A stretch of 64,000 bases of DNA from Octopus bimaculoides (taxonomy: Eukaryota), in the NCBI RefSeq assembly GCF_001194135.2, contig NC_068984.1, positions 124,057,071 to 124,121,070 of the forward strand, given 5' to 3'. The notes below the pieces were generated by a model. It was not told the origin of the DNA. It did not search any database and worked only from the letters and a program-made list of their open reading frames with translations. This document shows positions 26,911 through 64,000 of the stretch, in pieces. Both the position numbers and the translations under genes were made by a program. How positions within the stretch are numbered: position 1 is the first letter of the stretch; every line of letters begins with the position of its first letter.

Positions 26911-27429
26911 AGTAGTAGTAGTAGTAGTGGTAGTGGGCTATTTTTAGCCATAAAACAAATAATGTGACATTATGAAGCATATGACGGACGGACAATCTAT
27001 CCCTTGAAGATCTACCGCAAACGAACTCATACAAACACATCCAATCACATACACACACATACAGACATCAATCTAAATAACTACACACACACACACACAC
27101 ACAGGGATATACACTTACACGCACGCACACTGGCTTCTTCCTGACGCAATATAGAGAAACCCTTATTTCTGTATGACTAGTGTAGGGGACATTATGGTTT
27201 ATGTCCACTTTGCATTGTTGTCACTTTGTTGATTCATCAGGGAGAGAAATATGTTAAATACGTTAATAATTTATGGCGATGGCGGTGTTAAAGAGGTTGC
27301 ACGTACGAAGTGTGACGTTGGGACGGTAGCGGTATCACTGGCAAAAAAAAAAGAACATTCACAGCGCCATTGTTTTCTTTTAAAATGTTTCATCTTCTTT
27401 ACACAGCCACCACCGCTAAAAGGGAAACC

Positions 27430-27478
<49 letters not shown>

Positions 27479-27528
27479 TCAATAATGATAATAATAATAA
27501 TAATATCAATAATAATAATAATAATATC

Positions 27529-27577
<49 letters not shown>

Positions 27578-27579
27578 TC

Positions 27580-27625
<46 letters not shown>

Positions 27626-27627
27626 TC

Positions 27628-27661
<34 letters not shown>

Positions 27662-27702
27662 TCAATAATAATAATAATAATAATAAATAATAATAATATC
27701 AA

Positions 27703-27735
<33 letters not shown>

Positions 27736-27941
27736 GCGCTGCCGTCTCTCAATCAGTAATAATAACGATAACAGCAACAATAATAAATATTAATGTCGCA
27801 TAATCAGTAGCTGAACGTTACTAAATAACAAAAATAATAAATAATAAATAATAAATAACAAATAAATAGAAGCAAAACTGCTATAAAAATGTGGCGTTCA
27901 TCGATTTTTTGTAATGATGATGATGGTAATAATAACGATAA

Positions 27942-28020
<79 letters not shown>

Positions 28021-28040
28021 AAGGACAGCAACAATAATAA
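27430..28040. repeat. (AAT)n arrays with ATC interruptions plus (ACT)n
   Basis: Direct reading. Confidence 0.97.
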
Positions 28041-28788
28041 TTGCTTTTGTGGTCTTAAAAATAGTTTACACTGTACTCATTGGTCTTTAAATCTTCCTTT
28101 TGGAGTATCTTCCTTTCTTTTTTACTTTAAAGACATACACACTCTCTCTTTCTCTCTCTCACGCTTACTTTCCCTCTCTCTATGGAGAGAGAGAGAGAGT
28201 GAGAGAGAGGGTGATAGAGAGAGGGTGAGAGAGAGGGTGAGAGAGAAAGTAAGAGAGTGAGAGAGAGAGTGAAAGAGATAAAGAGAAAGAGATGGAGACC
28301 TTGGTTAAGGTCGATCAGACCAAATATTTCAAAAACAATATTGAACTGTACTCACGAAGGATATTTTAACAAAATGTATCTTAAATGCACTTAAACCAAC
28401 TCAAACGTGCCAAAAAAAAAAAAAAATTGCAAGCACAGCCCATTACATGTTATTTCAGTGTCAGTCATGTTGTCTCTTTAGAACATTTGAATGTGAAACG
28501 AAATAAAGATTGTACGCTACATAATGACGATCAGAAATGTTGAAGAAAAATTTAAGTACACTTTTAAAATATGCTTTCATTATATTCTTTTAAAAACACA
28601 ATCGTTGATGAAGACTCTTCACAAGGTAAATTTAGAACATAAATTTTCACTGTAGTATGCGCATTTATTTTTAGTATAACAGACTATAAAAATCTCTTGT
28701 ATGAATGTAGTTTCATTCAACACCCACATACATGTATTTACGTGTAATGCGAGTGTGGCTGTGTTATATATATACATATATATATATA

Positions 28789-33106: not shown

Positions 33107-33290
33107 GGGCCTTTCGATTAAGTCGATTACATCGACCCCAGTGCGTAACTTGTACTTAATTTATCGACCCCCGAATGGATGAAAGGCAAAGTCGACCTCG
33201 GCGGAATTTGAACTCAGAACGTAATGGCAGAGGATATACCGCTAAGCATTTCGCCCGGATGCTAACGATTTTGCCAGCTCTCCTCTTTTA
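33107..33290 (-). mobile_element. tRNA-derived SINE (GGCGAGCTGGCAGAA family)
   Basis: Reverse complement of the 44118-44355 copy. Confidence 0.9.
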
Positions 33291-42176: not shown

Positions 42177-42905
42177 CCAGTATAATAACGATATTTCCAA
42201 CTTTAAAATAATAAAATAAGAGAATGCGAAAGAAGAGGACAGGCGAAGAAAAAAACAGAGAAGAATGAGAAGAAAGAAAAGGAGGAATATTAAAATTATG
42301 GACAAAAAATAAAAAAAAGAAACCCTTTTAAACAAGAAAATTTTGAAGCAAACACAAGTCCATTGTTATACTTGGGGCCAATGAATACAAAACATATTTC
42401 GATGACGACGTTAAAACAAAAGAAGAGCTTTTCATTAGTTCTTCGTCAACTGTCCCCAAAATGTCCTTTAGAGCATCGTAAAGTTAGGATGTACAAACGA
42501 GTTTTGGTCACGATTTTCAGATATTGTGCATATATACATTGACACTAACTGCTGACATTCATACACACTCTCTCAGTCAACTGCTCTCTCGCCCACTCTC
42601 TCTCTTAATTCTTGTTCCTTTCTCTTAATGCAAAATTTCATATATATACATGTGTGTGTGTGCGTGCGCGCGCGTGTGTGTGTTTGTGTGTGTGCATGTG
42701 TGTGTGTATGCAGACACATACATGCAAACACACATACATGCAAACACACATACATGCAAACACACATACATGCAAACACACATATATGGTGTTCAGTTGA
42801 ATTGCTAAGATATTCACTTTCATTTATGAACTGAAGTTTCCACAGAGTTAACCCTTAAATTTGAGGTTCATATTTGTATTGGCAGAAATTGTGGCAGAAA
42901 TTAAA

Positions 42906-43140
42906 GGTGACGAGCTGGCAGAAACGTTAGCACGCCGAACGAAATGCTTAGCGGTATTTCGTCTGCCGTTACGTTCTGAGCTCAAATTTCGCCGATGTCG
43001 ACTTTGCCTTTCATCCTTTCGGGGTCGATAAATTAAGTACCAGTTACGCACTGGGGTCGATGTAATCGACTTAATCTCTTTGTCTGTCCTTGGTTGTACC
43101 CTCTATGTTTAGCCCCCTGTGGGCAATAAAGAAATAAGAA
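42906..43140 (+). mobile_element. Full-length tRNA-derived SINE
   Basis: A/B boxes, conserved core, tail CAATAAAGAAATAAGAA. Confidence 0.93.
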
Positions 43141-43499
43141 ATTGTAGTTGTCAAGCAGTTTAGTATGGCAGCTCATGAAATGAACTAATAAAAGTTTTGA
43201 TATTTACAAAAGCTTTACCTGAATATTATGACATTGAATATGTTAAACTCAAAGAGAATAGATAACTGTTTTACTGTGTTTTTTAGGAAGATTTTCAGAA
43301 GTGTTTCTCAACGAATTTCACTTCGAGCTCATTCCAAGCAAAATTACCTGAAAATTATTTGAAATAGATTGAGAGAGAATGGGTTGAGAGAGAAAATATT
43401 CAGGCCTTATTTGTGGATATAGACATCAAGATGAGAAGAAATTGTAATTGCTAGTCATGAATTTGAAATAATAACCGAAAGAGTATGATCAAGAACACA

Positions 43500-43830
43500 A
43501 GCGGCCGAAAAGCGCAAAGCTCGGGTATCAGGGAGTCTCCTCAGGTCGAACCACTACTTCTTCGTACTGAGAGGTCGCAGCTCTGACACTACGGACATGT
43601 GATTGGAATGTTACAGAATAGAAATGCAACATTGATTCTTCAAGCCGAGCTACCTGATAAGAGAGCTAGGTGGTGGGGGTGGGGTACCAAGAAAGTGATG
43701 GTTGGATAATATCCATAGTCTCAGTTTGGCAGACATGGGAATCCAGCAAGAAAATCTAATGAAGAATGCTTCTGATAGGACCCTATGGAAGGGGTGTCTG
43801 AGTATTTTATTCTCACGATCCTCTCTGAAA
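43500..43830 (+). mobile_element. LINE (RTE-like) 3' end fossil
   Basis: VEPLLLRTERSQL.HYGHVIGM..R resembles the RT C-terminal 'QLRW.GHV.RM' motif. Confidence 0.65.
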
Positions 43831-44117
43831 TAATTAGCGGAGAAGATGGATGGATGGATGGAATGCTACTGTGTCGTCTGTTATATTTCCATACATTTCA
43901 GAGATTAGTTCCCACAATGCCCCAATTAAGTGGGGTCCACGATGTTGTTAGATTTTTATCCTGATCTATATTTCTCCGCTACTCTAACTATAGTTTCTTC
44001 TGCACATATTGAATTGGTAATTTTCCGGCTGGCTATAAACGGCATCAATGTCACCACAGAAGAACCTGCGTAAACTTTGGGCACGTTCATTAATTTGCGA
44101 ACTAGGTGATAGAAACC

Positions 44118-44355
44118 AAGGCGGCGAGCTGGCAGAAACGTTAGCACACCGGGCGAAATGCTTAGCGGTATTTCATCTGCCGCTACGTTCTGAGTTCAAA
44201 TTCCGCCGAGGTCGACTTTGCCTTTCATTCTTTCGGGGTCGATAAATTAAGTACCAGTTACGTACTGGGGTCGATGTAATCGACTTAATCCGTTTGTCTG
44301 TCCTTGTTTGTCCCCTCTATGTCTAGCCCCTAGTGGGCAATAAAGAAATAAGAAA
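44118..44355 (+). mobile_element. Full-length, young-looking tRNA-derived SINE
   Basis: Very similar to the 42906 copy; intact A/B boxes. Confidence 0.95.
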
Positions 44356-44728
44356 CTAATGTTGTAGAGGCAATACGGCTACAAATTCCGATTGGCTGTT
44401 GCTTGAGTACAAATTGTGAGGAGCGTTTTCTACAACAAATTCTCCCATATGATGTGAATTGCAAATGGCAAACTGCCAATGAGACGTTGTCAACAAAAAA
44501 TGGCTCTTAATCTTCTCAAATGATCTTTCTATTTTAATGACACTGAAAATATTTTTTACATATTCTATCTAATATATTTCAATTATAAATGTATAAGTTT
44601 AGTATCCTGTATAATCTATCTATCCATCAATCTATCTATCTGCCTATCTATCTGTGTGTGTGTGTGTGTGTGTGTCTGTCTGTCTGTCTGTCTTCCTCTC
44701 TGTACATGTATATATATATATATGTGTG

Positions 44729-44777
<49 letters not shown>

Positions 44778-44973
44778 TATATGTGTGTGGAGAGGGCTGT
44801 GTGTGTGTGTGTGTATTTGCTGACAAGAGGTCAGAGTTAATGGCTCCATTAACGATTGCTATATATACATCCTAACCCTTACGCCACGTGACTTTGCATA
44901 GCTTGACATAAAAACCATTATTATGTGTAGGTATTTATAGACATGCATACATGCACAGAGGGGGGAAAGAGAG

Positions 44974-45051
<78 letters not shown>

Positions 45052-45984
45052 AGAGAGAGAATGAGAGAGAGAGAAAGAGAGAGAGAGAGAGAAAGAAAGA
45101 GAAAGATTGAGAGAGTGAGAGAGTGTTTGGGTATCTAAACTGATAAACAATGACAACAGTAATATCATGATGTCAGTCAGTTACTAAATCATACTCCATT
45201 CTTATTCAAGGAAGGACACATTAGCTAATGTATTTCTTCATGGTATTAAATTATGATACATATTTAGTAATACTTTAACGAAAGTGTACTTCCTTGATTA
45301 AGACAGAGGAGTATGGTCACATCTGGAATGTTTTTGATCGTAGGTTTTTCTGGTCTGGTTTGTCCTGTGGGTAAACGACAGCATTAATGTACAGGAGAAA
45401 CTTTTACTTTCATTTGCCTTTAGTTATTTCCCGATATAATTACTTGTTGAGAGAGGAGCGGACAAAATTCTAAGGAGAGAAACGAAATTGTGTGAGAATC
45501 ATGCCTTTCTCATGGACATAAATAGAAAACTAAAACTACGTGGATGCAAAAAGAGACAGAAGTAAAGAGAAAACGCACCTTCAAAACATTGGACTTGGTA
45601 GAAAGGAAAATTTGACGTCAAAGACGAAAAATGGCTGCAATTTGGAATTGAAAGTAAATGGCAAAAATAGAATTTAATGGGCATTGTTACTCACCTGCTG
45701 TTGATTTATATATTTATGCTTCGTTTTGGAAATAAGTTTAATATAAACACGATACATTTTTTTAATGCGCGATGCTATTTCATTATTTATATATTTTCGT
45801 ATTTGTTTCTTTAAATTAGCAAAGCGTATCTTCGTATCACTTAACAAAGACATCGATAATTTGTTTGTTCAGAGCAATATTGCCCTTTGAGTGATATTTT
45901 CAATAATGCTCGTTTCTTTATTTGAATCAATAAATAAAATAGAAGGAAAAAAAAAACAAATATGAATCAACAAATGCATAAAGA

Positions 45985-46170
45985 CAGGAACAATTTTCAA
46001 ACATTCCGAGACCGGATACAAATACGTTAAATTAATCTGCTTATAGCTGTGTCAACAGAACGGGATTCTGGGAGTATTTGTGTTCCGAAAATGAAATGGT
46101 GCCGTCACGTGACAAGTAAGTGCAGTAGCTTAACAAGTTATCTTTGTCCAAACACGTGACGTGAGACAAA
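45985..46170 (-). promoter_or_regulatory. Promoter-like block: two CACGTG E-boxes plus TATA-like TATAAG
   Basis: GTCACGTGAC at 46104-46113, CACGTG at 46153-46158, CTTATAG (reverse complement of CTATAAG) at ~46040-46046; conserved in the paralogous copy. Confidence 0.5.
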
Positions 46171-46233
46171 ATGGTTGGATAAACTGACTGTAATATATTC
46201 ATAGACAAATTTTTAATGCTGTGTAACTAATCA

Positions 46234-46296
<63 letters not shown>

Positions 46297-46332
46297 ATTG
46301 ATAGATAGACAGATAGATAGATAGATAGATAC

Positions 46333-46391
<59 letters not shown>

Positions 46392-46952
46392 TACACACAC
46401 AAACATAGCAATATATGTTCTTTTATAAAAGCACATTTATATGCCTAAATTCTTATTTGTACATTTTATAGTTACACAAGCACTAGTGCACTTATAAATA
46501 TATTATTGTATTGACTTAATTATTTGTACATTAAAATATATGAGCTTTTGTGCTTCAGTATCGCTACGTTTTTTATGCTTACACACACACACACACACAT
46601 ATATGTGTGTGTGTACGTTTACGCGTGCACTAATTAACACATATTGATATACGTACACTTATATATGCACATATTTGGTCTACATTTATTATGGGTTATC
46701 ATACCATATGTCTGTGTACTTATATATGTAGATTTTCATATTTTTTTGACGATTCGTGCGTACATTAAAATGTATAGATTTACATTTGCACACTTTTATA
46801 CTTTGTTCCAGAACTATCCAGGGAAATATTATCACCGGTATCTAAGTTTATAACCCTTTGATATGTAACTAGTTTCACATGTGCTAACGCACGAAACTCT
46901 CAGTACTTGAGTCCCTTTGTTTCTGATATATATTAATAAAATATATATATAC

Positions 46953-47110
46953 AGGCGCAGGCGTGGCTGCGTGGTAAGAAGCTTGCTTTCCATCCACATG
47001 ATTCCGGGTTCAGTCTCATTGCGTGGCACCTTGGGTAAGTGTTTTCTACTATAGCCGCGGGCCGACCAATGCCTTATGAATGGATTTGGTAGGCGCAAAC
47101 AGGAAGGACC

Positions 47111-47188
<78 letters not shown>

Positions 47189-47585
47189 CCACTTTTACCC
47201 GCTCCCATTGATTGCACCTAGTATAGCACTAGTGTAGCAATAATTGGGTCCCCTCCCAGCAGTATACTGGATAGATACTATCCCTTAGTGGGTTGAACCC
47301 CCAACCCCTAACTCTCTCACGTTATATATATATATATATATATGTATATTTATAAGTATATATCTATGTGTGTGGGTCTGTGTGTCTGCATTTGTCCTTC
47401 CCCCGTCACCGCTTGACAACAGCTGTTTCTGTGCTTACATCCCAATAACTTAGCCGTTCCGCAAAATAGTCCGATAAAATAAGTACTATGCTTAAGAAAT
47501 AAGTCCTGGGGTAGAACTCTTCAAGGCGGTGATCCAGCATGGCCGGAGCCAAATGACTGAAACGAATAAAAGAATAAAAGAATAC
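46953..47585 (+). mobile_element. SINE (5' part 46953-47112, 3' part 47370-47585) split by microsatellite and an insert
   Basis: Head GGCGTGGCTGCGTGGTAAGAAGCTTGCTT; tail CCAGCATGGCC..GACTGAAAC. Confidence 0.85.
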
Positions 47586-48097
47586 GCGTGTTTTGAGTTC
47601 CATTTTTCCTGTTTGCAGCGCTGAACCTATCGGCACAATTAAATATTCATTTTTAATTTATAGAAAGCTGAAATTCAATAAACCGACAATATATAACAAA
47701 ACTGTGAATATTTCCCATAATTAGTCGAAAATGGGAAACGGGAAGCTCTGAGAAATGATTTATTAAATTTCAGTTTAAATTAAAATACATAAATCTGATG
47801 GGTTACTCTATACTTTTGTAGAGTACAAACTTATAATTATCAGTAACTTCGAAGTTTCGACCAGCTAAGCTATGTTATTAGTTAGTCTTCCATAAGTCAG
47901 AAACAAAAGTTCACTCAATGTAAGTAATAGAAATGATATATTGGTATATCGTCAAACGTTGTTAGAATGTGACTCAGTTTCGCGTCGACAATCTGACTGG
48001 TAAGGTAGTGAAACCAGTAATATAGTACTTGATGATATAAAAGTATCAATATGTACATATTTACATATATGCATACATTTACATATGCGTATATGAA

Positions 48098-48169
<72 letters not shown>

Positions 48170-49566
48170 CACTTGTCTGTCTATCTAACTATGAATATGA
48201 CAAAACAGGAAAGTGGAAATCTTTTGGTATTATTTATTCTCCATCACACGTCTTTCATTTGCTAATAAGAATCACAGAGATTTACATGTTAGATAGACAT
48301 GTCAGGAATTTTCTATTAGAGATTATTCAGATACAGAAAAATTATATGTACAATAACATTTGGATAAAGCGTTTATATCTAGATATTAAACAGGAGAAGC
48401 ACAATATATGCACGCACACACACACACACACATATATNNNNNNNNNNNNNNNNNNNNNNNNNNNNNNNNNNNNNNNNNNNNNNNNNNNNNNNNNNNNNNN
48501 NNNNNNNNNNNNNNNNNNNNNNNNNNNNNNNNNNNNNNNNNNNNNNNNNNNNNNNNNNNNNNNNNNNNNNNNNNNNNNNNNNNNNNNNNNNNNNNNNNNN
48601 NNNNNNNNNNNNNNNNNNNNNNNNNNNNNNNNNNNNNNNNNNNNNNNNNNNNNNNNNNNNNNNNNNNNNNNNNNNNNNNNNNNNNNNNNNNNNNNNNNNN
48701 NNNNNNNNNNNNNNNNNNNNNNNNNNNNNNNNNNNNNNNNNNNNNNNNNNNNNNNNNNNNNNNNNNNNNNNNNNNNNNNNNNNNNNNNNNNNNNNNNNNN
48801 NNNNNNNNNNNNNNNNNNNNNNNNNNNNNNNNNNNNNNNNNNNNNNNNNNNNNNNNNNNNNNNNNNNNNNNNNNNNNNNNNNNNNNNNNNNNNNNNNNNN
48901 NNNNNNNNNNNNNNNNNNNNNNNNNNNNNNNNNNNNNNNTATATATATATATATATACACTTATACAAACTTGCAAGCACAAATTCACGCACACATAGGC
49001 AAACACACACACACACACACACACACGCGCGCGCGCATGCAAATATACACTTATAGATCCATACACACATACACATAAGTTTTAAGTACGCAACATTAAT
49101 AAAATTGAACTTGTATAAATATAGAACAATCATTCTAGTCTGCATTTTTGTTTCATGTCACGTGTTTGGACAAAAAAAAAAGCTTCTGCAGTTCAATCAT
49201 TGCGTTTACTTGTCACGTGACAGCACCATTCCATTTTGGAAGACAAACACACCCAGAATCCGGTTCTGTTGACACAGCTATAAGCAGATTAGATTGACGT
49301 ACTTGTATCCGGTTTCGGAATATTTGAAAATTGCCTCGGCATTTATATATTTATTCATTTACTTTTTTTGTTTTTCTATTTTATTCATTCATTTTCTCCA
49401 TTTATTTATTCATAATAACGAAACGAATGTTATTGGGAATAATGCTCAGTGAACAAAAATCACTTTGCCTAAGCAAATTATTGATGAATTTGTGAAGCAA
49501 TACGAGGCAAAATTTTGTAAATTGAAAGAAGTAAAAATTAGAATTATAAAAATGAAAGATAATTAA

Positions 49567-49826
49567 CTTCACAGTTCTATATTTAAGAGATGAGGAATTA
49601 TTTACATTATTTACATTATTTACATTTGTCGGATATTTGTCCTCATCTTGTTTGTTGTTAACACAACGTTTCGGCTGATATACCCTCCAGCCTTCGTCAG
49701 GTGTCTTGGGGAAATTTCGAACCTGGGTTCTCATTCCTAACGATGTTACTATTATTATATTATTATTACTATTATTAATCAGGTCGCTGCCGTGAATCGA
49801 ACTCGGAACCTTGGGGTTAGTAGCCC
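49567..49826 (-). mobile_element. Short non-autonomous element: tRNA-like head, (AAT)n linker and Penelope-type hammerhead tail
   Basis: Minus-strand B box GAGTTCGATTC (49794-49804); tail shared with 63480-63645; an A-box-bearing head continues on the + strand at 49829-49847 into the gap. Confidence 0.8.
49660..49705 (-). ncRNA. Minimal type I hammerhead ribozyme
   Basis: GACAC-CUGACGA-A-GGCUG(GAGGGUAUAU)CAGCC-GAAA-CGUU|GUGUU: intact core, 5-bp stems I and II, palindromic AACGUU stem III, GUU cleavage triplet. Confidence 0.82.
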
Positions 49827-50254
49827 ACGGGCATATGGCGTAGTGGTNNNNNNNNNNNNNNNNNNNNNNNNNNNNNNNNNNNNNNNNNNNNNNNNNNNNN
49901 NNNNNNNNNNNNNNNNNNNNNNNNNNNNNNNNNNNNNNNNNNNNNNNNNNNNNNNNNNNNNNNNNNNNNNNNNNNNNNNNNNNNNNNNNNNNNNNNNNNN
50001 NNNNNNNNNNNNNNNNNNNNNNNNNNNNNNNNNNNNNNNNNNNNNNNNNNNNNNNNNNNNNNNNNNNNNNNNNNNNNNNNNNNNNNNNNNNNNNNNNNNN
50101 NNNNNNNNNNNNNNNNNNNNNNNNNNNNNNNNNNNNNNNNNNNNNNNNNNNNNNNNNNNNNNNNNNNNNNNNNNNNNNNNNNNNNNNNNNNNNNNNNNNN
50201 NNNNNNNNNNNNNNNNNNNNNNNNNNNNNNNNNNNNNNNNNNNNNNNNNNNNNN

Positions 50255-50589
50255 TCAACGGAACAGCCTGCTCGTGAAATTAACGTGCAAGTGGCTGAGC
50301 ACTCCACAGACACGTGTACCATTAACGTAGTTCTCGGGGATATTCAGCGTGACACAGTGTGACAAGGCTGGCCCTTTGAATTACAGGCACAACAGAAACA
50401 GGAAGTAAGAGCGAGAGAAAGTTGTGGTGAAAGAGTACAGCAGGGTTCGCCACCATCCCCTGCCGGAGCCCCGTGGAGCTTTAGGTGTTTTCGCTCAATA
50501 AACACTCACAATGCCCGGTCTGGGAATCGAAACCGCGATCCTATGACCGCGAGTCCGCTGCCCTAACCACTGGGCCATTGCGCCTCTAC
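50255..50589 (-). mobile_element. Near full-length tRNA-derived SINE
   Basis: Intact A/B-box head on the minus strand; same family as 37630 and 29712. Confidence 0.95.
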
Positions 50590-50935
50590 CGTTGGTGTCT
50601 ACGTTCATCCTTTCCTTCTCACACAAAACAATAAACAAGTAAATACATAAAACAACATAATTAACAATACGTATAACAAAATAAAAAAAATAACAATATA
50701 TAAAATAAGTAACACTATCTGGTGACAAAGTTACGAGACTTTTGGTAGGAAGTCTTCAGGTGTCCGAGAAATATCCAGCTCTTTTTTCTCGCTTAAGCCC
50801 CACGGAAAATCACGAACATCACACCATTTCGTTTCCCTCTCGACAGCTTTATAGTCCTGCTCTTGAATAACAAAAAAAAAAAAATGAAGTCAAAAGATAT
50901 CTAAAATTATTATTGTCTCTAAAAGNNNNNNNNNN

Positions 50936-50984
<49 letters not shown>

Positions 50985-51519
50985 ATACACACACACACAT
51001 ATCTGTTTTGTCCGAATCTAAGGAAAAAGTTAATCGTCACTACATGTGACTGGGGCGGGAGTCGATGCACCTACATGGCTAGAAATAAGCGTCAAAACCT
51101 CTTAATGCTGTAAGAAGAGCGCAATATATATACAGTGACAGAGGAGGTAGCCACGTCATGACCGTCTCTAAAATCACTAGACTAGATTAGTTTCACCTAT
51201 ACATCATCAGTAGTGAGTACGCAAACGGTCGATGCTTTGGCTAACTCCGTCTACCAGTATATATATTTTTTTATATAAAAATTAATGGCTTATATATATA
51301 TGCATACTTACATACATGAAAGTATGTATATATGCATGTACTTACGTATGGTTGCATTCTTTGCATACTTATTGAGATTTCGAATGTGTCAGAATAGGTA
51401 GAATATTAGTCTAGAGTTGATACAATAGCTAGGTGAAGTACTGGGTGCTCGTCTGTAAGTAGTACCACGGTATATTCACCGTTTTTAGAACTGACACGAA
51501 CATAATTTTGTCCGTCTTT

Positions 51520-51860
51520 TCGTTCAGAGTACAAAATCCGCCCAGGTCGACTTTACCTTTTATCCTTCCGAACTCGATAAAATGAATACCAATTGAGTAC
51601 TGGGGTCGATGTGATCGACTTAGCCCCTCTCCGAAATTGCTGGCATTGAGCCAAAATTTTTGAGCAATATTTGGCTCAAAGCTACAAATTTTGACGGATG
51701 GACCCAAGTATTTAACTGATATTTCCTTTTATCGACACCGGAAGGACTAACAGGTAAAGTTGATCTCAACGTGACTTGAACTCACAGCGTAAGGCGCCAG
51801 AAGAAAAATTCCGGTAGGCATTTTGCCCGACCTGCTAATGATTCTGCTAGCATGCCATCT
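51520..51860. mobile_element. Two degraded SINE copies in opposite orientation
   Basis: GGTCGACTTT..ACTGGGGTCGATG core on + (51520-51660); reverse complement at ~51700-51860. Confidence 0.65.
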
Positions 51861-52571
51861 TAGGTTATAAAATAATTAAAAAAATATAATACTGGATCTA
51901 GAATTTTTGATTAATAAAGAGACAAACAGAAAAAAATAAGCTCTTTATAGTAACATGAATATAATTAAAATACAATTCCAGTTTTGATAGTTAAACTGGG
52001 ATTCAACACTAAAAATATGTTTACATTGAAAGAAAAGAAAAACCTGCAGATTTAAACAAGGATGAAAATATGTGAGAATTAGTTTCCTTATATTTATTTT
52101 CTTTTATTTTTTGTATTATTTTATTTGTAACAGCACGTTTCGCTTTGTTTAACTGCAAATATCGTAATATTTCTTTAGAGTTTAAGGTGGCTCATAAAAG
52201 TATTCAGACAGAACATTAAGAATCATTCTCAGTGTTACTAAAGTAGCAAAATGACTTGAGAAGATTAGGAACTAGACAAACATACAGTGGTTGACATCCT
52301 GACATCGGCAATTTGCCATGAACATAATTACATCACAGGAGATTGTTTACAGTAACAAATGTACTTCCCAAATTGCACTTCAGCTTAGAGGCAATCCGAA
52401 CTTTTAGCAATACTGTCATTGCAGTATTTGTTTTTATGAGCCAGCCATGAAAGAAGAAAGCATTAACGTTTGCCGAACCTACGCCCCCTTATGAGAATGA
52501 TGTTGTCGATACTCAATATGAACGTCTACTAGGGAAAAGTATAGATAGGTTAGCGAAAAAGCGTCAGCCTA

Positions 52572-52643
52572 GTTCGAATTCAAAATGAATTCCTGGTTCG
52601 AATACAAAATGAATTCCTGGTTCGAATACAAAATGAATTCCAC
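52572..52643 (+). repeat. 24-bp tandem repeat x3
   Basis: GTTCGAAT(T/A)CAAAATGAATTCCTG. Confidence 0.95.
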
Positions 52644-53174
52644 TGAAAGATGGAATGTTGGGCCAGACCTCTAGATTGCATGACAGTTTGAAAGAAAACG
52701 TCATAGTTCTATGAGCATCACCTGTATTTGCTTAAGTCTGATACCTAGATCCACATATAAGGCATGAGTCATTTGCACGTATCCATAAGCATGTCTTTGA
52801 AATAATTTTCCGAGATCTGTAGTTGAAATAATTTCCGGTATGCAACACCTGAATTTTCAGTACCGAAATACCTCCTCGGAAATTCTACCTGTAAAAGTTA
52901 ATTAATCATTCGTGTATTTTAGCGACTTCTAAATGAAAAATAACCAGTATCACAACAGTCAAATACAGCTGCAGTACATATTCAGTGACTTCTAATTTTC
53001 AGCAGATTCGCCGTCGTTAGTCTGACGACAACATGCAAGCTAAAACTTCGAGGTCACGCTAAATATTAATAAATATAAACTCTACAAAAAAATATCCTTC
53101 GGTTTCATATTAAATTGTTTTTATATATAACTTCACTTAGGAACAAACATTAATATATACATATATAGGCAAAT

Positions 53175-53383
53175 CAAAAATACAAACAAGAACAGAAAAA
53201 AACAACAAGAGTCAAATGGGCGTATGCAGTAAATGTATTACACTGACACTCAAGAAGGTTTAAGATGAAAAAAAGAGGGGCGTGACGTTTCGTACATCGC
53301 TCTTCGTCAGAAAGAGAAAAGAGGAAAATGTCCGGAGAGAAGGAAAAGAATAGTCCGAGAAAACGACATGTGTCGTTACATAT

Positions 53384-53385
<2 letters not shown>
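53175..53385 (-). mobile_element. Penelope-like terminal-repeat fragment with a degenerate hammerhead core
   Basis: Minus strand CUGACGA-AGAGCGAUGUAC-GAAA-CGUC (53284-53310); stems I and II poorly paired. Confidence 0.5.
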
Positions 53386-53465
<80 letters not shown>

Positions 53466-54069
53466 ATGTATATATATATANNNNNNNNNNNNNNNNNNNN
53501 NNNNNNNNNNNNNNNNNNNNNNNNNNNNNNNNNNNNNNNNNNNNNNNNNNNNNNNNNNNNNNNNNNNNNNNNNNNNNNNNNNNNNNNNNNNNNNNNNNNN
53601 NNNNNNNNNNNNNNNNNNNNNNNNNNNNNNNNNNNNNNNNNNNNNNNNNNNNNNNNNNNNNNNNNNNNNNNNNNNNNNNNNNNNNNNNNNNNNNNNNNNN
53701 NNNNNNNNNNNNNNNNNNNNNNNNNNNNNNNNNNNNNNNNNNNNNNNNNNNNNNNNNNNNNNNNNNNNNNNNNNNNNNNNNNNNNNNNNNNNNNNNNNNN
53801 NNNNNNNNNNNNNNNNNNNNNNNNNNNNNNNNNNNNNNNNNNNNNNNNNNNNNNNNNNNNNNNNNNNNNNNNNNNNNNNNNNNNNNNNNNNNNNNNNNNN
53901 NNNNNNNNNNNNNNNNNNNNNNNNNNNNNNNNNNNNNNNNNNNNNNNNNNNNNNNNNNNNNNNNNNNNNNNNNNNNNNNNNNNNNNNNNNNNNNNNNNNN
54001 NNNNNNNNNNNNNNNNNNNNNNNNNNNNNNNNNNNNNNNNNNNNNNNNNNNNNNNNNNNNNNNNNNNNN

Positions 54070-54110
<41 letters not shown>

Positions 54111-54419
54111 CAGAGAGAGTAACTGATAGAGAGATTGTGTGTGTGTGCGCGCGCGCGTGTATCAACAGTTATTGTACATATGCAGAACATCTGACAGCTG
54201 CCATAAAAGCTCGTTTATTTGTCCTGAGTTTAAGCTTACGAAGGCATCTCTACCGTTTTAACATCGTCGATGAAATATGTTTTGTATTCATTGTCTCCAA
54301 GTTTAACAATAGGCTCGTGTTTGCCTCATGTTTGTCTTGTATAATCGCATTCTTTTCCTTTCTTTTCTTCTATTTTATTTTTCATATTCCTTTTTTTTTT
54401 CTTCTGGCAGAATTCTTAG

Positions 54420-55010
54420 AGTATTAACATTCTGAATTCAAATCTCACTCAGGCCGTCTTTGCCTTTCATCCTCCCAGCGGTTGATAAAATAAAGTACCA
54501 GTGAAAAGTCACTGTCGATGGTAATGAATAAATCCCTTACCTCAAAATTAATGGCCTTCTGACTAAATAAAATACCCTTATTAAATGGCGCTGAGCAGTT
54601 ATAGTCAATAAAACATAGGACAAAATTCTTTGCAATAATTATTCCGGTTCTTTACTGTTTCTGAGGTCAAATACCGCCGGGGTCAACTTTGCCTTTCATG
54701 CTTTCGGAGCAAATGAAATAAAAAACCAGTCAAGCACTGGGATTGATGTAATTGGCTCGCTTCTTCCCGTTCAATTTTGAATCAATTCTTATTTTATTAT
54801 TATTCGTATCGCAAAGGTGGCGAGCTGGTATAATCGTTAGCACATCGGGCAAAATGCTTCGCGGCATTTCGTCCGTTTTACATTCTGAGTTCAAATTCAA
54901 CTGAAGTCGACTTTGCCTTTCATCCTTTCGGGGTCCAGTGAAAAACTGGGTCAATGTAATCGACTAATCCTTTCACCAAAAATTTCAGGCCTTGTGCCTT
55001 TAGTAGAAAG
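54420..55010 (+). mobile_element. Cluster of three SINE copies (GGCGAGCTGGCAGAA family)
   Basis: Repeated CTTTGCCTTTCATCC / GATGTAAT core at ~54450, ~54680 and ~54900. Confidence 0.8.
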
Positions 55011-61402: not shown

Positions 61403-61614
61403 CTTGTTTGCATGTATGTCTCTAAGTTTCCACCTATATATCTATATTTATACATGTTTCTTTTTCTAGATTAACTAGATTAACACAATCCTGATGGAAG
61501 GAAATTTCGTGCTTTACAAAAAAAGCCCACTTCCAATGGTCTTGTTATCTGTTTTTTAAAGACATTTTTTGTATAAAATTAATAGTTTTTAATTTTAGAA
61601 TACAGTTTTTTATC

Positions 61615-62530
61615 ATGGCGGCGAGCTGGCAGAAACGGTAGTACGACAGGCGAACTGCTTATCGGTATTTCTTCTGTCGTTACGTTTTGAGTTCGAATTC
61701 CACCGAGGTCGACTTTGCCTTTTATCCTTCGGGGTCGATAAATTAAGTACCGGTTGCATACTGTGGTCGATCTAATCGACTGTCCTCCTTCCCTAAACAT
61801 TTTCGGGCCTTGCGCCTGGAGTAGAAAAGATTACATTTTTTCATATATTGTTACTGTATAAAGACTTTTTCCTGCGTAGTCAGAAGTTTGCTTCCCAACC
61901 ACATGGTTCAGAGTTCAGTCCTACTGCGTGGCACCCTGTGCAAGTGTCTTCTACTATTACTGCGGGCTGATCAAAAGCATGTGAGTGGAAACTGAAAGAA
62001 GAGTACCGTATATCTTTTATCTTATCTTTCAGTTTTTTCAGTCATTAGAATGCGGCCATGGTGGGGCACTACCTTGAAGGATTTTAGCAGAATGGATCGA
62101 CCTCAGTATTTTTTTTAAAGCCTGGTACTTATTTTATCAAACTCTTTTGCGGAACTGCTAAGTTACGGGTACGTAAACACACCAACACTGGGTGTCAAAC
62201 AGTGGTGGTGGACCAAAAACATAAATACACACACACGCACACACACACACATACGGTAGGCTTCTTTTAGTTTTCACCTACCAAATCGACTCACAAGTCT
62301 ATGGTCAGCCCGTGGCTATAGAAAAATCAAGTTTCTTACCACAAAGTCACACCTGCACCTGTGTATATGTGTGTATGTATGTGTGCATGTGTAAGTGTGT
62401 GTGTGTATGCGTGTGTTTATTTGTGTCTATCCCTCGCCACCGCTTGAAAAACGGTGTTGGTATGTTTACGTCCCAGTAACTTACCGGTTCGGCCTAAGAG
62501 ACTGATAGAATAAGTACCAAGCTAAAGAAA
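61615..62530. mobile_element. SINE cluster of mixed families and orientations
   Basis: 61615-61830 GGCGAGCTGGCAGAA (+); 61880-62030 (+); 62020-62330 (-); 62400-62530 (+) tail. Confidence 0.8.
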
Positions 62531-63479: not shown

Positions 63480-63645
63480 GTTCTATATTTAAGAGATGAG
63501 GTATTATGTACATTATTTACATTTGACGGATACTTGTCCTCATCTTGTTTGTTGTTAACATGTTTCAGCCTTCTTCGGTTGTCTTGGGGGAAATTTCGAA
63601 CCTGGGTTCTCATTCCTAAGCTGTTTTTCGATGTTATTATTATTA
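63480..63645 (-). mobile_element. Second copy of the hammerhead-tail element; ribozyme core disrupted
   Basis: Matches 49575-49750 but lacks GGCTGATATACCCTCC and has lost CUGACGA. Confidence 0.85.
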
Positions 63646-63659
63646 TCATTATTATTATT

Positions 63660-63975
63660 TTATGTTTGACTTTTGCTTTGCATTTGTACAATTTGGATCC
63701 AAGTCTCACCCAGAGACCTCAAGAGACAACAAGTTAGAAGTTCATGTAGGTGTTATGCCTAGGGTACCATATATTTCGATTTGTACATAGTGTTGTTCCA
63801 GAGAATGTTTAAGAAACCATAAGAAAATTATGTGTTTGTTTTAATATTTGAGATCACATAGACAGTATTTTACGTAGGATATGGGCAGTTCCCATGAGCA
63901 CTATCTTTTGAACTTCAGCCATTTTGGGGTTTCCTGGTATCTGAGCTAGGTAGTAATCAGCCCGTTTCGCTGTCA
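63660..63975 (-). mobile_element. R4/Dong-like RLE element 3' end and UTR inserted in (TAA)n
   Basis: IPGNPKMAEVQKIVLMGTAHILRKILSM*; flanked by (TAT)n on both sides; UTR matches 10377-10603. Confidence 0.88.
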
Positions 63976-64000
63976 TTATTATTATTATTATTATTATTGT

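What the first reader, a model, noticed from the sequence alone, without database searches (positions are those of the whole stretch)
42330..54340. Ancient ~12-kb inverted duplication: two head-to-head decayed copies of an unidentified ORF
By-eye alignment gives six colinear inverted blocks: 45750-46170/49150-49540, 45450-45520/50810-50870, 44370-44570/52200-52430, 43950-44070/52440-52560, 43280-43440/52730-52890 and 42330-42540/54170-54340. In the frames pointing away from the centre several blocks show synonymous and conservative changes: QSEFVAVLPLQH vs QSELLAILSLQY (5 silent changes), KQIIDVFVK vs KQIIDEFVK, HDSHTISF vs HEHHTISF, and FNVVIEICFVFIGPKYNNGLVFAS vs FNIVDEICFVFIVSKFNNRLVFAS. 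Both copies now carry stops and frameshifts and arm-specific SINE/LINE insertions. One block (43.3/52.8 kb) reads better inward (ALFVDIDIKMR/ALYVDLGIRLK, with an AG acceptor at the same position in both), so strand is not fully resolved. I could not assign the protein; it may be a lineage-specific gene family or an unclassified transposon.
Basis: partly seen in the sequence, partly recalled or inferred. Interest (0 to 1): 0.7.

Follow-up and report, generated by a model that had tools for sequence, protein, structure and literature searches.

The report
Decayed non-coding inverted duplication in octopus
Two 4-5 kb stretches of octopus DNA lying back to back really are old mirror-image copies of each other, but nothing suggests they ever encoded a protein, so this is an ordinary decayed inverted duplication and not a lost gene pair.

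Summary
The similarity is real. Five blocks form one colinear anti-diagonal: 45778-46268/49043-49557, 44348-44579/52196-52437, 43200-43428/52739-52981, 42479-42605/54098-54232 and 42268-42417/54255-54405. A sixth short block (45475-45529/50784-50839) is significant only locally. They cover 1213 aligned nt at 74% identity (K2P 0.33). Four of the 12 single-copy repeat pairs in the 64-kb window lie on this one diagonal.

The "decayed ORF" reading is not supported:
- All six frames are conserved alike, and every frame of every block has a stop in at least one arm (4-11 per arm in B1).
- pN/pS values fall mostly within a simulated non-coding null.
- Only 7 of 36 indels are multiples of three.
- Pfam finds nothing in any frame.
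- 776 aa of block peptides find no homolog among 5.8 billion proteins, a set that does hold Octopus proteins.

The DNA between blocks is mostly arm-specific SINEs, micro- and minisatellites and assembly gaps; about 0.6 kb in each arm stays unexplained.

Best reading: an old local inverted duplication of non-coding DNA, decaying neutrally.

Still open: genome-wide copy number (which would separate a duplication from a transposable element), the scaffold join that sets the inverted orientation, and why a 140-nt core with two CACGTGAC motifs is better conserved (86%). Interest is low.

The parts
42268..46300 (.). Left arm of the inverted duplication. One contig, GC 36.5%. Holds blocks B5, B4, B3, B2, a short weak block and B1, reading from the outer end inward.
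49010..54405 (.). Right arm. Four contigs joined by N gaps at 49848-50254, 50926-50935 and 53481-54069. Holds the same blocks in mirrored order and orientation.
45778..46268 (.). Block B1, left copy. 77.6% identical to 49043-49557 over 487 aligned nt (K2P 0.27). Has 4-11 stops per frame.
49043..49557 (.). Block B1, right copy (reverse complement of the left copy).
45978..46117 (.). Best-conserved 140-nt core of B1. 86% identity against 73% for B1 as a whole (permutation P 4.5e-4). GC 39% against 29% for B1. No RNA-structure signal. Its right-arm partner is 49208-49346.
49208..49346 (.). Right-arm partner of the B1 core.
46104..46160 (.). Two CACGTGAC E-box-type motifs: GTCACGTGAC at 46104-46113 and CACGTGAC at 46153-46160. 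Both are kept in the right arm at 49212-49221 and 49157-49164.
45475..45529 (.). Short weak colinear block. Partner 50784-50839. About 70% identity over 56 columns, local z 7.5.
44348..44579 (.). Block B2, left copy. Partner 52196-52437. 70% identity over 230 nt, K2P 0.38.
52196..52437 (.). Block B2, right copy.
43200..43428 (.). Block B3, left copy. Partner 52739-52981. 67% identity over 221 nt, K2P 0.44.
52739..52981 (.). Block B3, right copy.
42479..42605 (.). Block B4, left copy. Partner 54098-54232. 69% identity. In both arms it ends in a (CT)n/(AG)n microsatellite.
54098..54232 (.). Block B4, right copy. It abuts (AG)n at 54070-54119 and gap 53481-54069.
42268..42417 (.). Block B5, left copy and outer end of the detectable homology. 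Partner 54255-54405. 79% identity. The homology fades in A-rich sequence with no sharp terminus.
54255..54405 (.). Block B5, right copy. Followed by three SINE copies at 54427-54973.
46301..49009 (.). Spacer between the arms. Contents: (GATA)23 at 46300-46391 and its mirror image (TATC)24 at 48098-48192; another SINE-like repeat at 46959-47186; microsatellites; and gap 48438-48939, which is flanked on both sides by (CA)n/(TA)n.
42840..43151 (+). Left-arm-specific full-length tRNA-derived SINE. K2P 0.08 from the window consensus, so it is younger than the duplication.
44054..44365 (+). Second left-arm-specific full-length SINE of the same family. K2P 0.07 from the consensus.
43429..44053 (.). 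Left-arm-specific sequence with no other copy in the window. It contains a peptide (43699-43830, + strand) that I recall as resembling a LINE ORF2 C-terminal tail. This is unverified: Pfam and the protein search found nothing.
49574..50604 (.). Right-arm-specific interspersed repeats around gap 49848-50254. 49574-49775 matches 63480-63663. 50255-50604 is a tRNA-like SINE head that also occurs near 37.6-37.9 kb.
51505..51972 (.). Right-arm-specific SINE copies (51505-51622 on +, 51698-51869 on -). They lie on the opposite side of B2 from the left-arm SINE, so they are independent insertions.
52568..52641 (.). Right-arm-specific 24-nt minisatellite (3.1 copies).

Best explanation
A stretch of non-coding octopus DNA was duplicated locally in inverted orientation. 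About 3 kb of it is still recognisable as unique sequence. The result is a palindrome-like pair of arms around a 1.7-2.8 kb spacer.

Since then both arms have decayed without detectable protein-level constraint. They differ by 26% in the parts that still align (K2P 0.33) and carry about one indel per 34 nt. The arms were pushed apart by independent SINE insertions, microsatellite and minisatellite growth, and unassembled gaps. Only five or six islands of similarity are left.

Shown: two copies, adjacent, colinear and mirrored (given the scaffold); no coding signal; younger arm-specific repeats.

Inferred:
- The event was a local duplication and not two insertions of a mobile element.
- The mechanism is unknown. 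Candidates are fold-back or template-switch replication, or a tandem duplication followed by an inversion between oppositely oriented SINEs.
- The age is tens of millions of years. Arm divergence of at least 0.16 per arm compares with 0.07-0.08 for the young SINE copies inserted afterwards. Octopus TE bursts are reported at about 25 and 56 Myr (as summarised in PMC12988792).
For: - Colinear inverted blocks at E from 1e-82 to 2e-5.
- Those blocks match only each other in the 64 kb.
- Four of the 12 single-copy pairs in the window lie on one anti-diagonal.
- Spacing between blocks becomes comparable in the two arms once arm-specific SINEs, satellites and gaps are removed.
- The microsatellites at the edges of B1 and B4 sit at homologous positions in both arms.
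- No coding signal.
- No Pfam family, Rfam family or protein homolog.
- The SINE copies inserted into the left arm are only 7-8% from their consensus, so they are younger than the arm divergence.
- 74% identity rules out haplotype or fold-back-chimera artefacts.
Against: - Genome-wide copy number could not be measured, so a low- or medium-copy non-autonomous element is not excluded.
- The inverted orientation depends on one scaffold join across gap 48438-48939.
- Conservation is uneven. A 140-nt core is 86% identical while neighbouring sequence is 60-70%. About 250-300 nt at matching positions (43.9-44.05 kb against 52.44-52.74 kb) are barely alignable. Simple uniform neutral decay does not predict this.
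- No breakpoint signature of any particular mechanism survives.
Confidence: 0.6

Rival explanations
1. The arms are two copies of an old non-autonomous interspersed repeat that landed head to head. Alternatively the whole 12 kb is one foldback-like element with kilobase-long terminal inverted repeats.
For: - About 45% of the octopus genome is repeats (PMC12988792), and this window is dense with them: 18 copies of one SINE.
- The blocks have no coding capacity, as expected of a non-autonomous element.
- Other two-copy repeats exist in the window.
Against: - There are exactly two copies in 64 kb, adjacent to each other, and both keep the same five or six segments in the same order. For a family of 1000 copies or fewer in a genome of about 2.7 Gb (size from my own knowledge), a second full copy within 10 kb is expected less than 1% of the time by my estimate.
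- There are no transposase, reverse-transcriptase or integrase remnants.
- There is no sharp terminus. The outer end fades in A-rich DNA, so no target-site duplication can be defined.
- The 28-nt invariant core string has no match in JGI metagenome contigs. This is a weak test.
Confidence: 0.2
2. One reading: two head-to-head pseudogenes of a lineage-specific protein-coding gene, with the blocks being former exons.
For: - Similarity comes in discrete blocks separated by unalignable DNA, as exons would.
- Short peptide pairs such as FNVVIEICFVFIGPKYNNGLVFAS/FNIVDEICFVFIVSKFNNRLVFAS exist.
- In one 114-nt stretch of B5, two frames are free of stops in both arms.
Against: - All six frames score alike in tblastx, and stops sit inside the best-conserved stretches.
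- Stops occur in every frame of every block in at least one arm, over the full block alignments.
- pN/pS is within the non-coding null.
- Only 7 of 36 indels are multiples of three.
- No non-low-complexity open stretch exceeds about 100 aa between 41.3 and 55.3 kb.
- Pfam gives 0 families in six frames.
- There are 0 homologs for 776 aa of block peptides in a database that holds Octopus proteomes.
Confidence: 0.03
3. The two copies are real paralogs but the inverted arrangement is a scaffolding error. The right-hand group of contigs would be flipped or misplaced, and the true structure would be a direct tandem or dispersed duplication.
For: - The left arm is a single contig (41292-48437) and no contig holds parts of both arms.
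- The orientation rests on the join across the 502-N gap at 48438-48939, which is flanked by microsatellite.
- Another gap edge in the window carries a 100% identical 137-nt duplicate, which shows that this assembly has local errors.
Against: - The four right-arm contigs are mutually consistent in order and orientation with the left arm mirrored. A flip would need coordinated errors at both ends of the group.
- The microsatellite types on the two sides of the central gap match: (CA)n(TA)n on the left, (TA)n...(CA)n on the right.
Confidence: 0.08
4. The duplication is real, and the surviving blocks are kept by selection or gene conversion. The B1 core is the main candidate, for example as a duplicated cis-regulatory module with two E-box (CACGTGAC) sites or as exons of a non-coding RNA.
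For: - The core 45978-46117 is 86% identical against 73% for B1 overall (P 4.5e-4).
- Both CpG-containing CACGTGAC motifs are kept in both arms. The motif has 8 strand hits in the window against 0.8 expected, and 6 of the 8 come from the two cores.
- Neighbouring DNA at matching positions is barely alignable.
Against: - The core is also the least AT-rich part of B1 (39% GC against 29%). The flanks may simply mutate, slip and misalign more.
- Given 86% identity, keeping two 8-mers is not surprising (probability about 0.09 by my estimate).
- There is no RNA-structure signal (z 0 to 1) and no Rfam family.
- With only two sequences, constraint cannot be separated from gene conversion or chance.
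Confidence: 0.09

Closest known systems
Inverted segmental duplications and genomic palindromes (for example the ampliconic palindromes of primate sex chromosomes)
   Same: Two adjacent arms in mirror orientation around a short spacer, colinear along their length, produced by a local rearrangement and not by transposition.
   Different: Classical palindromes are tens to hundreds of kb long and more than 99% identical because arm-to-arm gene conversion maintains them, and they carry expressed genes. Here the arms are about 4-5 kb, 74% identical in the parts that still align, gene-free and visibly decaying.
Foldback (FB) and other long-TIR DNA transposons
   Same: One unit bounded by long inverted repeats with a non-repeated middle, and no coding capacity in non-autonomous copies.
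   Different: FB arms are built from tandem subrepeats, have defined ends with target-site duplications, and occur in many copies. None of these was seen here: there are no subrepeat arrays in the blocks, no sharp ends and only one pair in 64 kb. Genome-wide copy number was not testable.
Penelope-like elements, which often insert as inverted or tandem partial dimers
   Same: Head-to-head arrangement of two copies of the same sequence.
   Different: No reverse-transcriptase or GIY-YIG endonuclease remnant in any frame. The arms share five or six segments over their whole length, not a truncated 5' piece.
Hairpin-RNA (hpRNA) inverted-repeat loci that give endogenous siRNAs
   Same: Inverted repeat with a loop of a few kb.
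   Different: Functional hpRNA stems are near-perfect. Here the stems would be 60-86% paired with frequent indels. Expression is unknown.

Membership tests
Protein-coding gene or pseudogene pair | An open or nearly open reading frame shared by both copies | tested here: not met
   B1 has 4-11 stops per frame in each arm. Every frame of every block has a stop in at least one arm. No non-low-complexity open stretch exceeds about 100 aa between 41.3 and 55.3 kb.
Protein-coding gene or pseudogene pair | Codon-periodic substitution pattern (excess of synonymous change in one frame) | tested here: not met
   pN/pS is 0.43-1.5 with no frame standing out. The simulated non-coding null has mean 0.82 and best-of-six median 0.43. 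The one low value (0.22) is in a frame with two stops per arm.
Protein-coding gene or pseudogene pair | Indels biased to multiples of three | tested here: not met
   7 of 36 indels are multiples of three.
Protein-coding gene or pseudogene pair | Homologous proteins or domains elsewhere | tested here: not met
   Pfam gives 0 families at E<=0.1 in six frames. There are 0 hits at E<=0.01 for 776 aa of block peptides among 5.8 billion proteins. Octopus proteins are present in that set.
Interspersed repeat / transposable element | Many dispersed copies in the genome | not testable with these tools
   No cephalopod genome is searchable here. Within the 64-kb window the blocks have exactly two copies. 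Window ORFs are not on record in the contig index. The core string has no match in metagenome contigs.
Interspersed repeat / transposable element | Remnants of transposase, reverse transcriptase or integrase, or defined termini with target-site duplication | tested here: not met
   No Pfam family in any frame. The outer end of the homology fades in A-rich DNA and the inner end lies in microsatellite, so no terminus or target-site duplication can be defined.
Local inverted segmental duplication (palindrome) | Two adjacent copies, inverted, colinear over several segments | tested here: met
   Five or six colinear blocks with coordinate sums of 95324-96785. Four of the 12 single-copy pairs of the window lie on this diagonal.
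Local inverted segmental duplication (palindrome) | Orientation and adjacency supported by contiguous sequence | not testable with these tools
   The arms lie on different contigs. The join is the 502-N gap at 48438-48939.
Assembly artefact (haplotig or fold-back chimera) | Near-identical arms | tested here: not met
   The arms are 74% identical with 36 indels in 1.2 kb.
Structured non-coding RNA gene pair | Match to a known family, or a fold more stable than shuffled sequence | tested here: not met
   The only Rfam hits are microsatellite-driven, below-threshold miRNA, snoRNA and scaRNA models outside the blocks. There are no tRNAs. The core folds with z of 0.0 to 1.1 on both strands of both copies.

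The most novel reading that the evidence does not exclude
The 140-nt B1 core (45978-46117 and 49208-49346) may be a functional non-coding element that was duplicated with the arms. It would have been kept by selection or by arm-to-arm gene conversion while the rest decayed. It carries a perfect GTCACGTGAC palindrome and a second CACGTGAC about 45 nt away, both retained in both arms. One possibility is a pair of mirror-image bHLH-Zip-responsive regulatory modules or promoters of divergent non-coding transcripts.
Probability: 0.08. Interest if true: 0.35.

Novelty: new member of a known kind. Interest (0 to 1): 0.12.

Why it matters
It matters little beyond annotation. The result removes a candidate "unknown gene family" from the list. 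It also shows that by-eye peptide matches in AT-rich non-coding DNA are not evidence of coding. Small old inverted duplications like this one are raw material for studying how cephalopod genomes were rearranged. A recent review notes that rearrangement breakpoints have not yet been analysed in coleoids (PMC12988792). A single decayed example without a recoverable breakpoint adds almost nothing to that question. Only the better-conserved E-box core would be worth a look in expression or chromatin data.

Tried and rejected
- The repeat finder on 40-57 kb was swamped by N runs and microsatellites. Unfiltered blastn and tblastx were swamped too. I redid both with low-complexity filtering.
- Rfam at E<=1 gave only (TG)n/(TA)n-driven, below-threshold miRNA, snoRNA and scaRNA hits, none of them in a block. 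ARAGORN found no tRNA.
- DNA references cannot be scanned against Pfam when they contain stops. I pasted the frame fragments instead and got 0 families.
- Pfam on the nine longest non-repetitive ORFs of the window and on a LINE-tail-like peptide gave 0 families.
- Exact-protein look-ups of two window ORFs in the public contig index found nothing on record. I therefore could not reach other copies or other assemblies of this genome.
- I tested whether the palindrome extends outward through apparently colinear hits at 32-40 kb and 56-62 kb. Rejected: those are multi-copy SINEs and microsatellite.
- I tested whether an old SINE just outside B5 in both arms was part of the duplicated unit. Rejected: the left copy is no closer to the right copies than to the family consensus (K2P 0.44 against 0.40).
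- I tested whether the SINE at 44110-44275 and the inverted one at 51698-51869 are homologous by position. Rejected: they lie on opposite sides of B2 and differ greatly in age (0.07 against 0.34 from the consensus).
- Folding the B1 core as RNA gave no signal.
- A metagenome scan for the invariant 28-mer gave 0 matches.
- The Albertin 2015 genome paper is not held in the library. TE figures are taken from the review PMC12988792.

Full report
Setting. The window is 64 kb, 36% GC, with 14 N gaps and a great deal of microsatellite. It comes from an Octopus genome. Peptides read from two of its interspersed repeats match an O. sinensis protein at 89% (LOC115224785 isoform X2) and an O. bimaculoides protein at 73% (A0A0L8GQ56). 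One tRNA-derived SINE alone has 18 copies in the window. No Pfam domain was found in the nine longest non-repetitive ORFs of the window. No tRNA genes were found.

Noticed in passing
window 7556-7692 and 7993-8129: A 137-nt direct repeat, 100% identical. Its first copy starts exactly at the right edge of gap 7009-7555. This is probably assembly redundancy at a gap edge and not biology.
   Followed up: no
window, 18 sites (e.g. 10725-10892, 33116-33288, 42840-43151, 44054-44365, 54427-54973, 61614-61781): A tRNA-derived SINE, about 170 nt for the core and about 310 nt full length, has 18 copies in 64 kb with K2P to the consensus from 0.07 to 0.37. A piece of it is exonised or mis-annotated inside O. 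bimaculoides protein A0A0L8GQ56, an aminopeptidase-like protein (PF17900/PF11838).
   Followed up: partly
window 49574-49775 and 63480-63663: Another interspersed repeat. Its reading frame (MRTQVRNFPKTP...) forms the N-terminus of O. sinensis LOC115224785 isoform X2 at 89% identity. That makes it a repeat-derived first exon or an annotation artefact.
   Followed up: partly
window 10353-10706 and 63637-63998: An otherwise single-copy direct repeat pair, 84% identical over 363 nt and 53 kb apart. The second copy runs to the end of the window.
   Followed up: no
window 46300-46391 and 48098-48192: (GATA)23 and (TATC)24 are mirror images of each other inside the spacer. They may be the innermost surviving part of the palindrome, which would shrink the spacer to about 1.7 kb. 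Such arrays are common in this window, so this could be chance.
   Followed up: partly
window 46104-46160 and 49157-49221: Each arm carries a pair of CACGTGAC motifs, one of which is the perfect palindrome GTCACGTGAC. The 8-mer has 8 strand hits in the window against 0.8 expected, and 6 of them come from these two cores.
   Followed up: partly
window 19960-20680, 24940-25380, 27250-28260: Several low-complexity tracts of hundreds of nt (poly-T/CT-rich, (ATT)n/(AAT)n and similar) produce long spurious ORFs in the ORF listing.
   Followed up: no
window 4871-5623 (- strand): The longest N-free, non-microsatellite ORF in the window (250 aa, Ser/Leu/Thr/Pro-rich) has no Pfam family. It found no homolog when included in the composite query, and it is not indexed in public contigs. 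It may be a repeat-derived ORF.
   Followed up: partly
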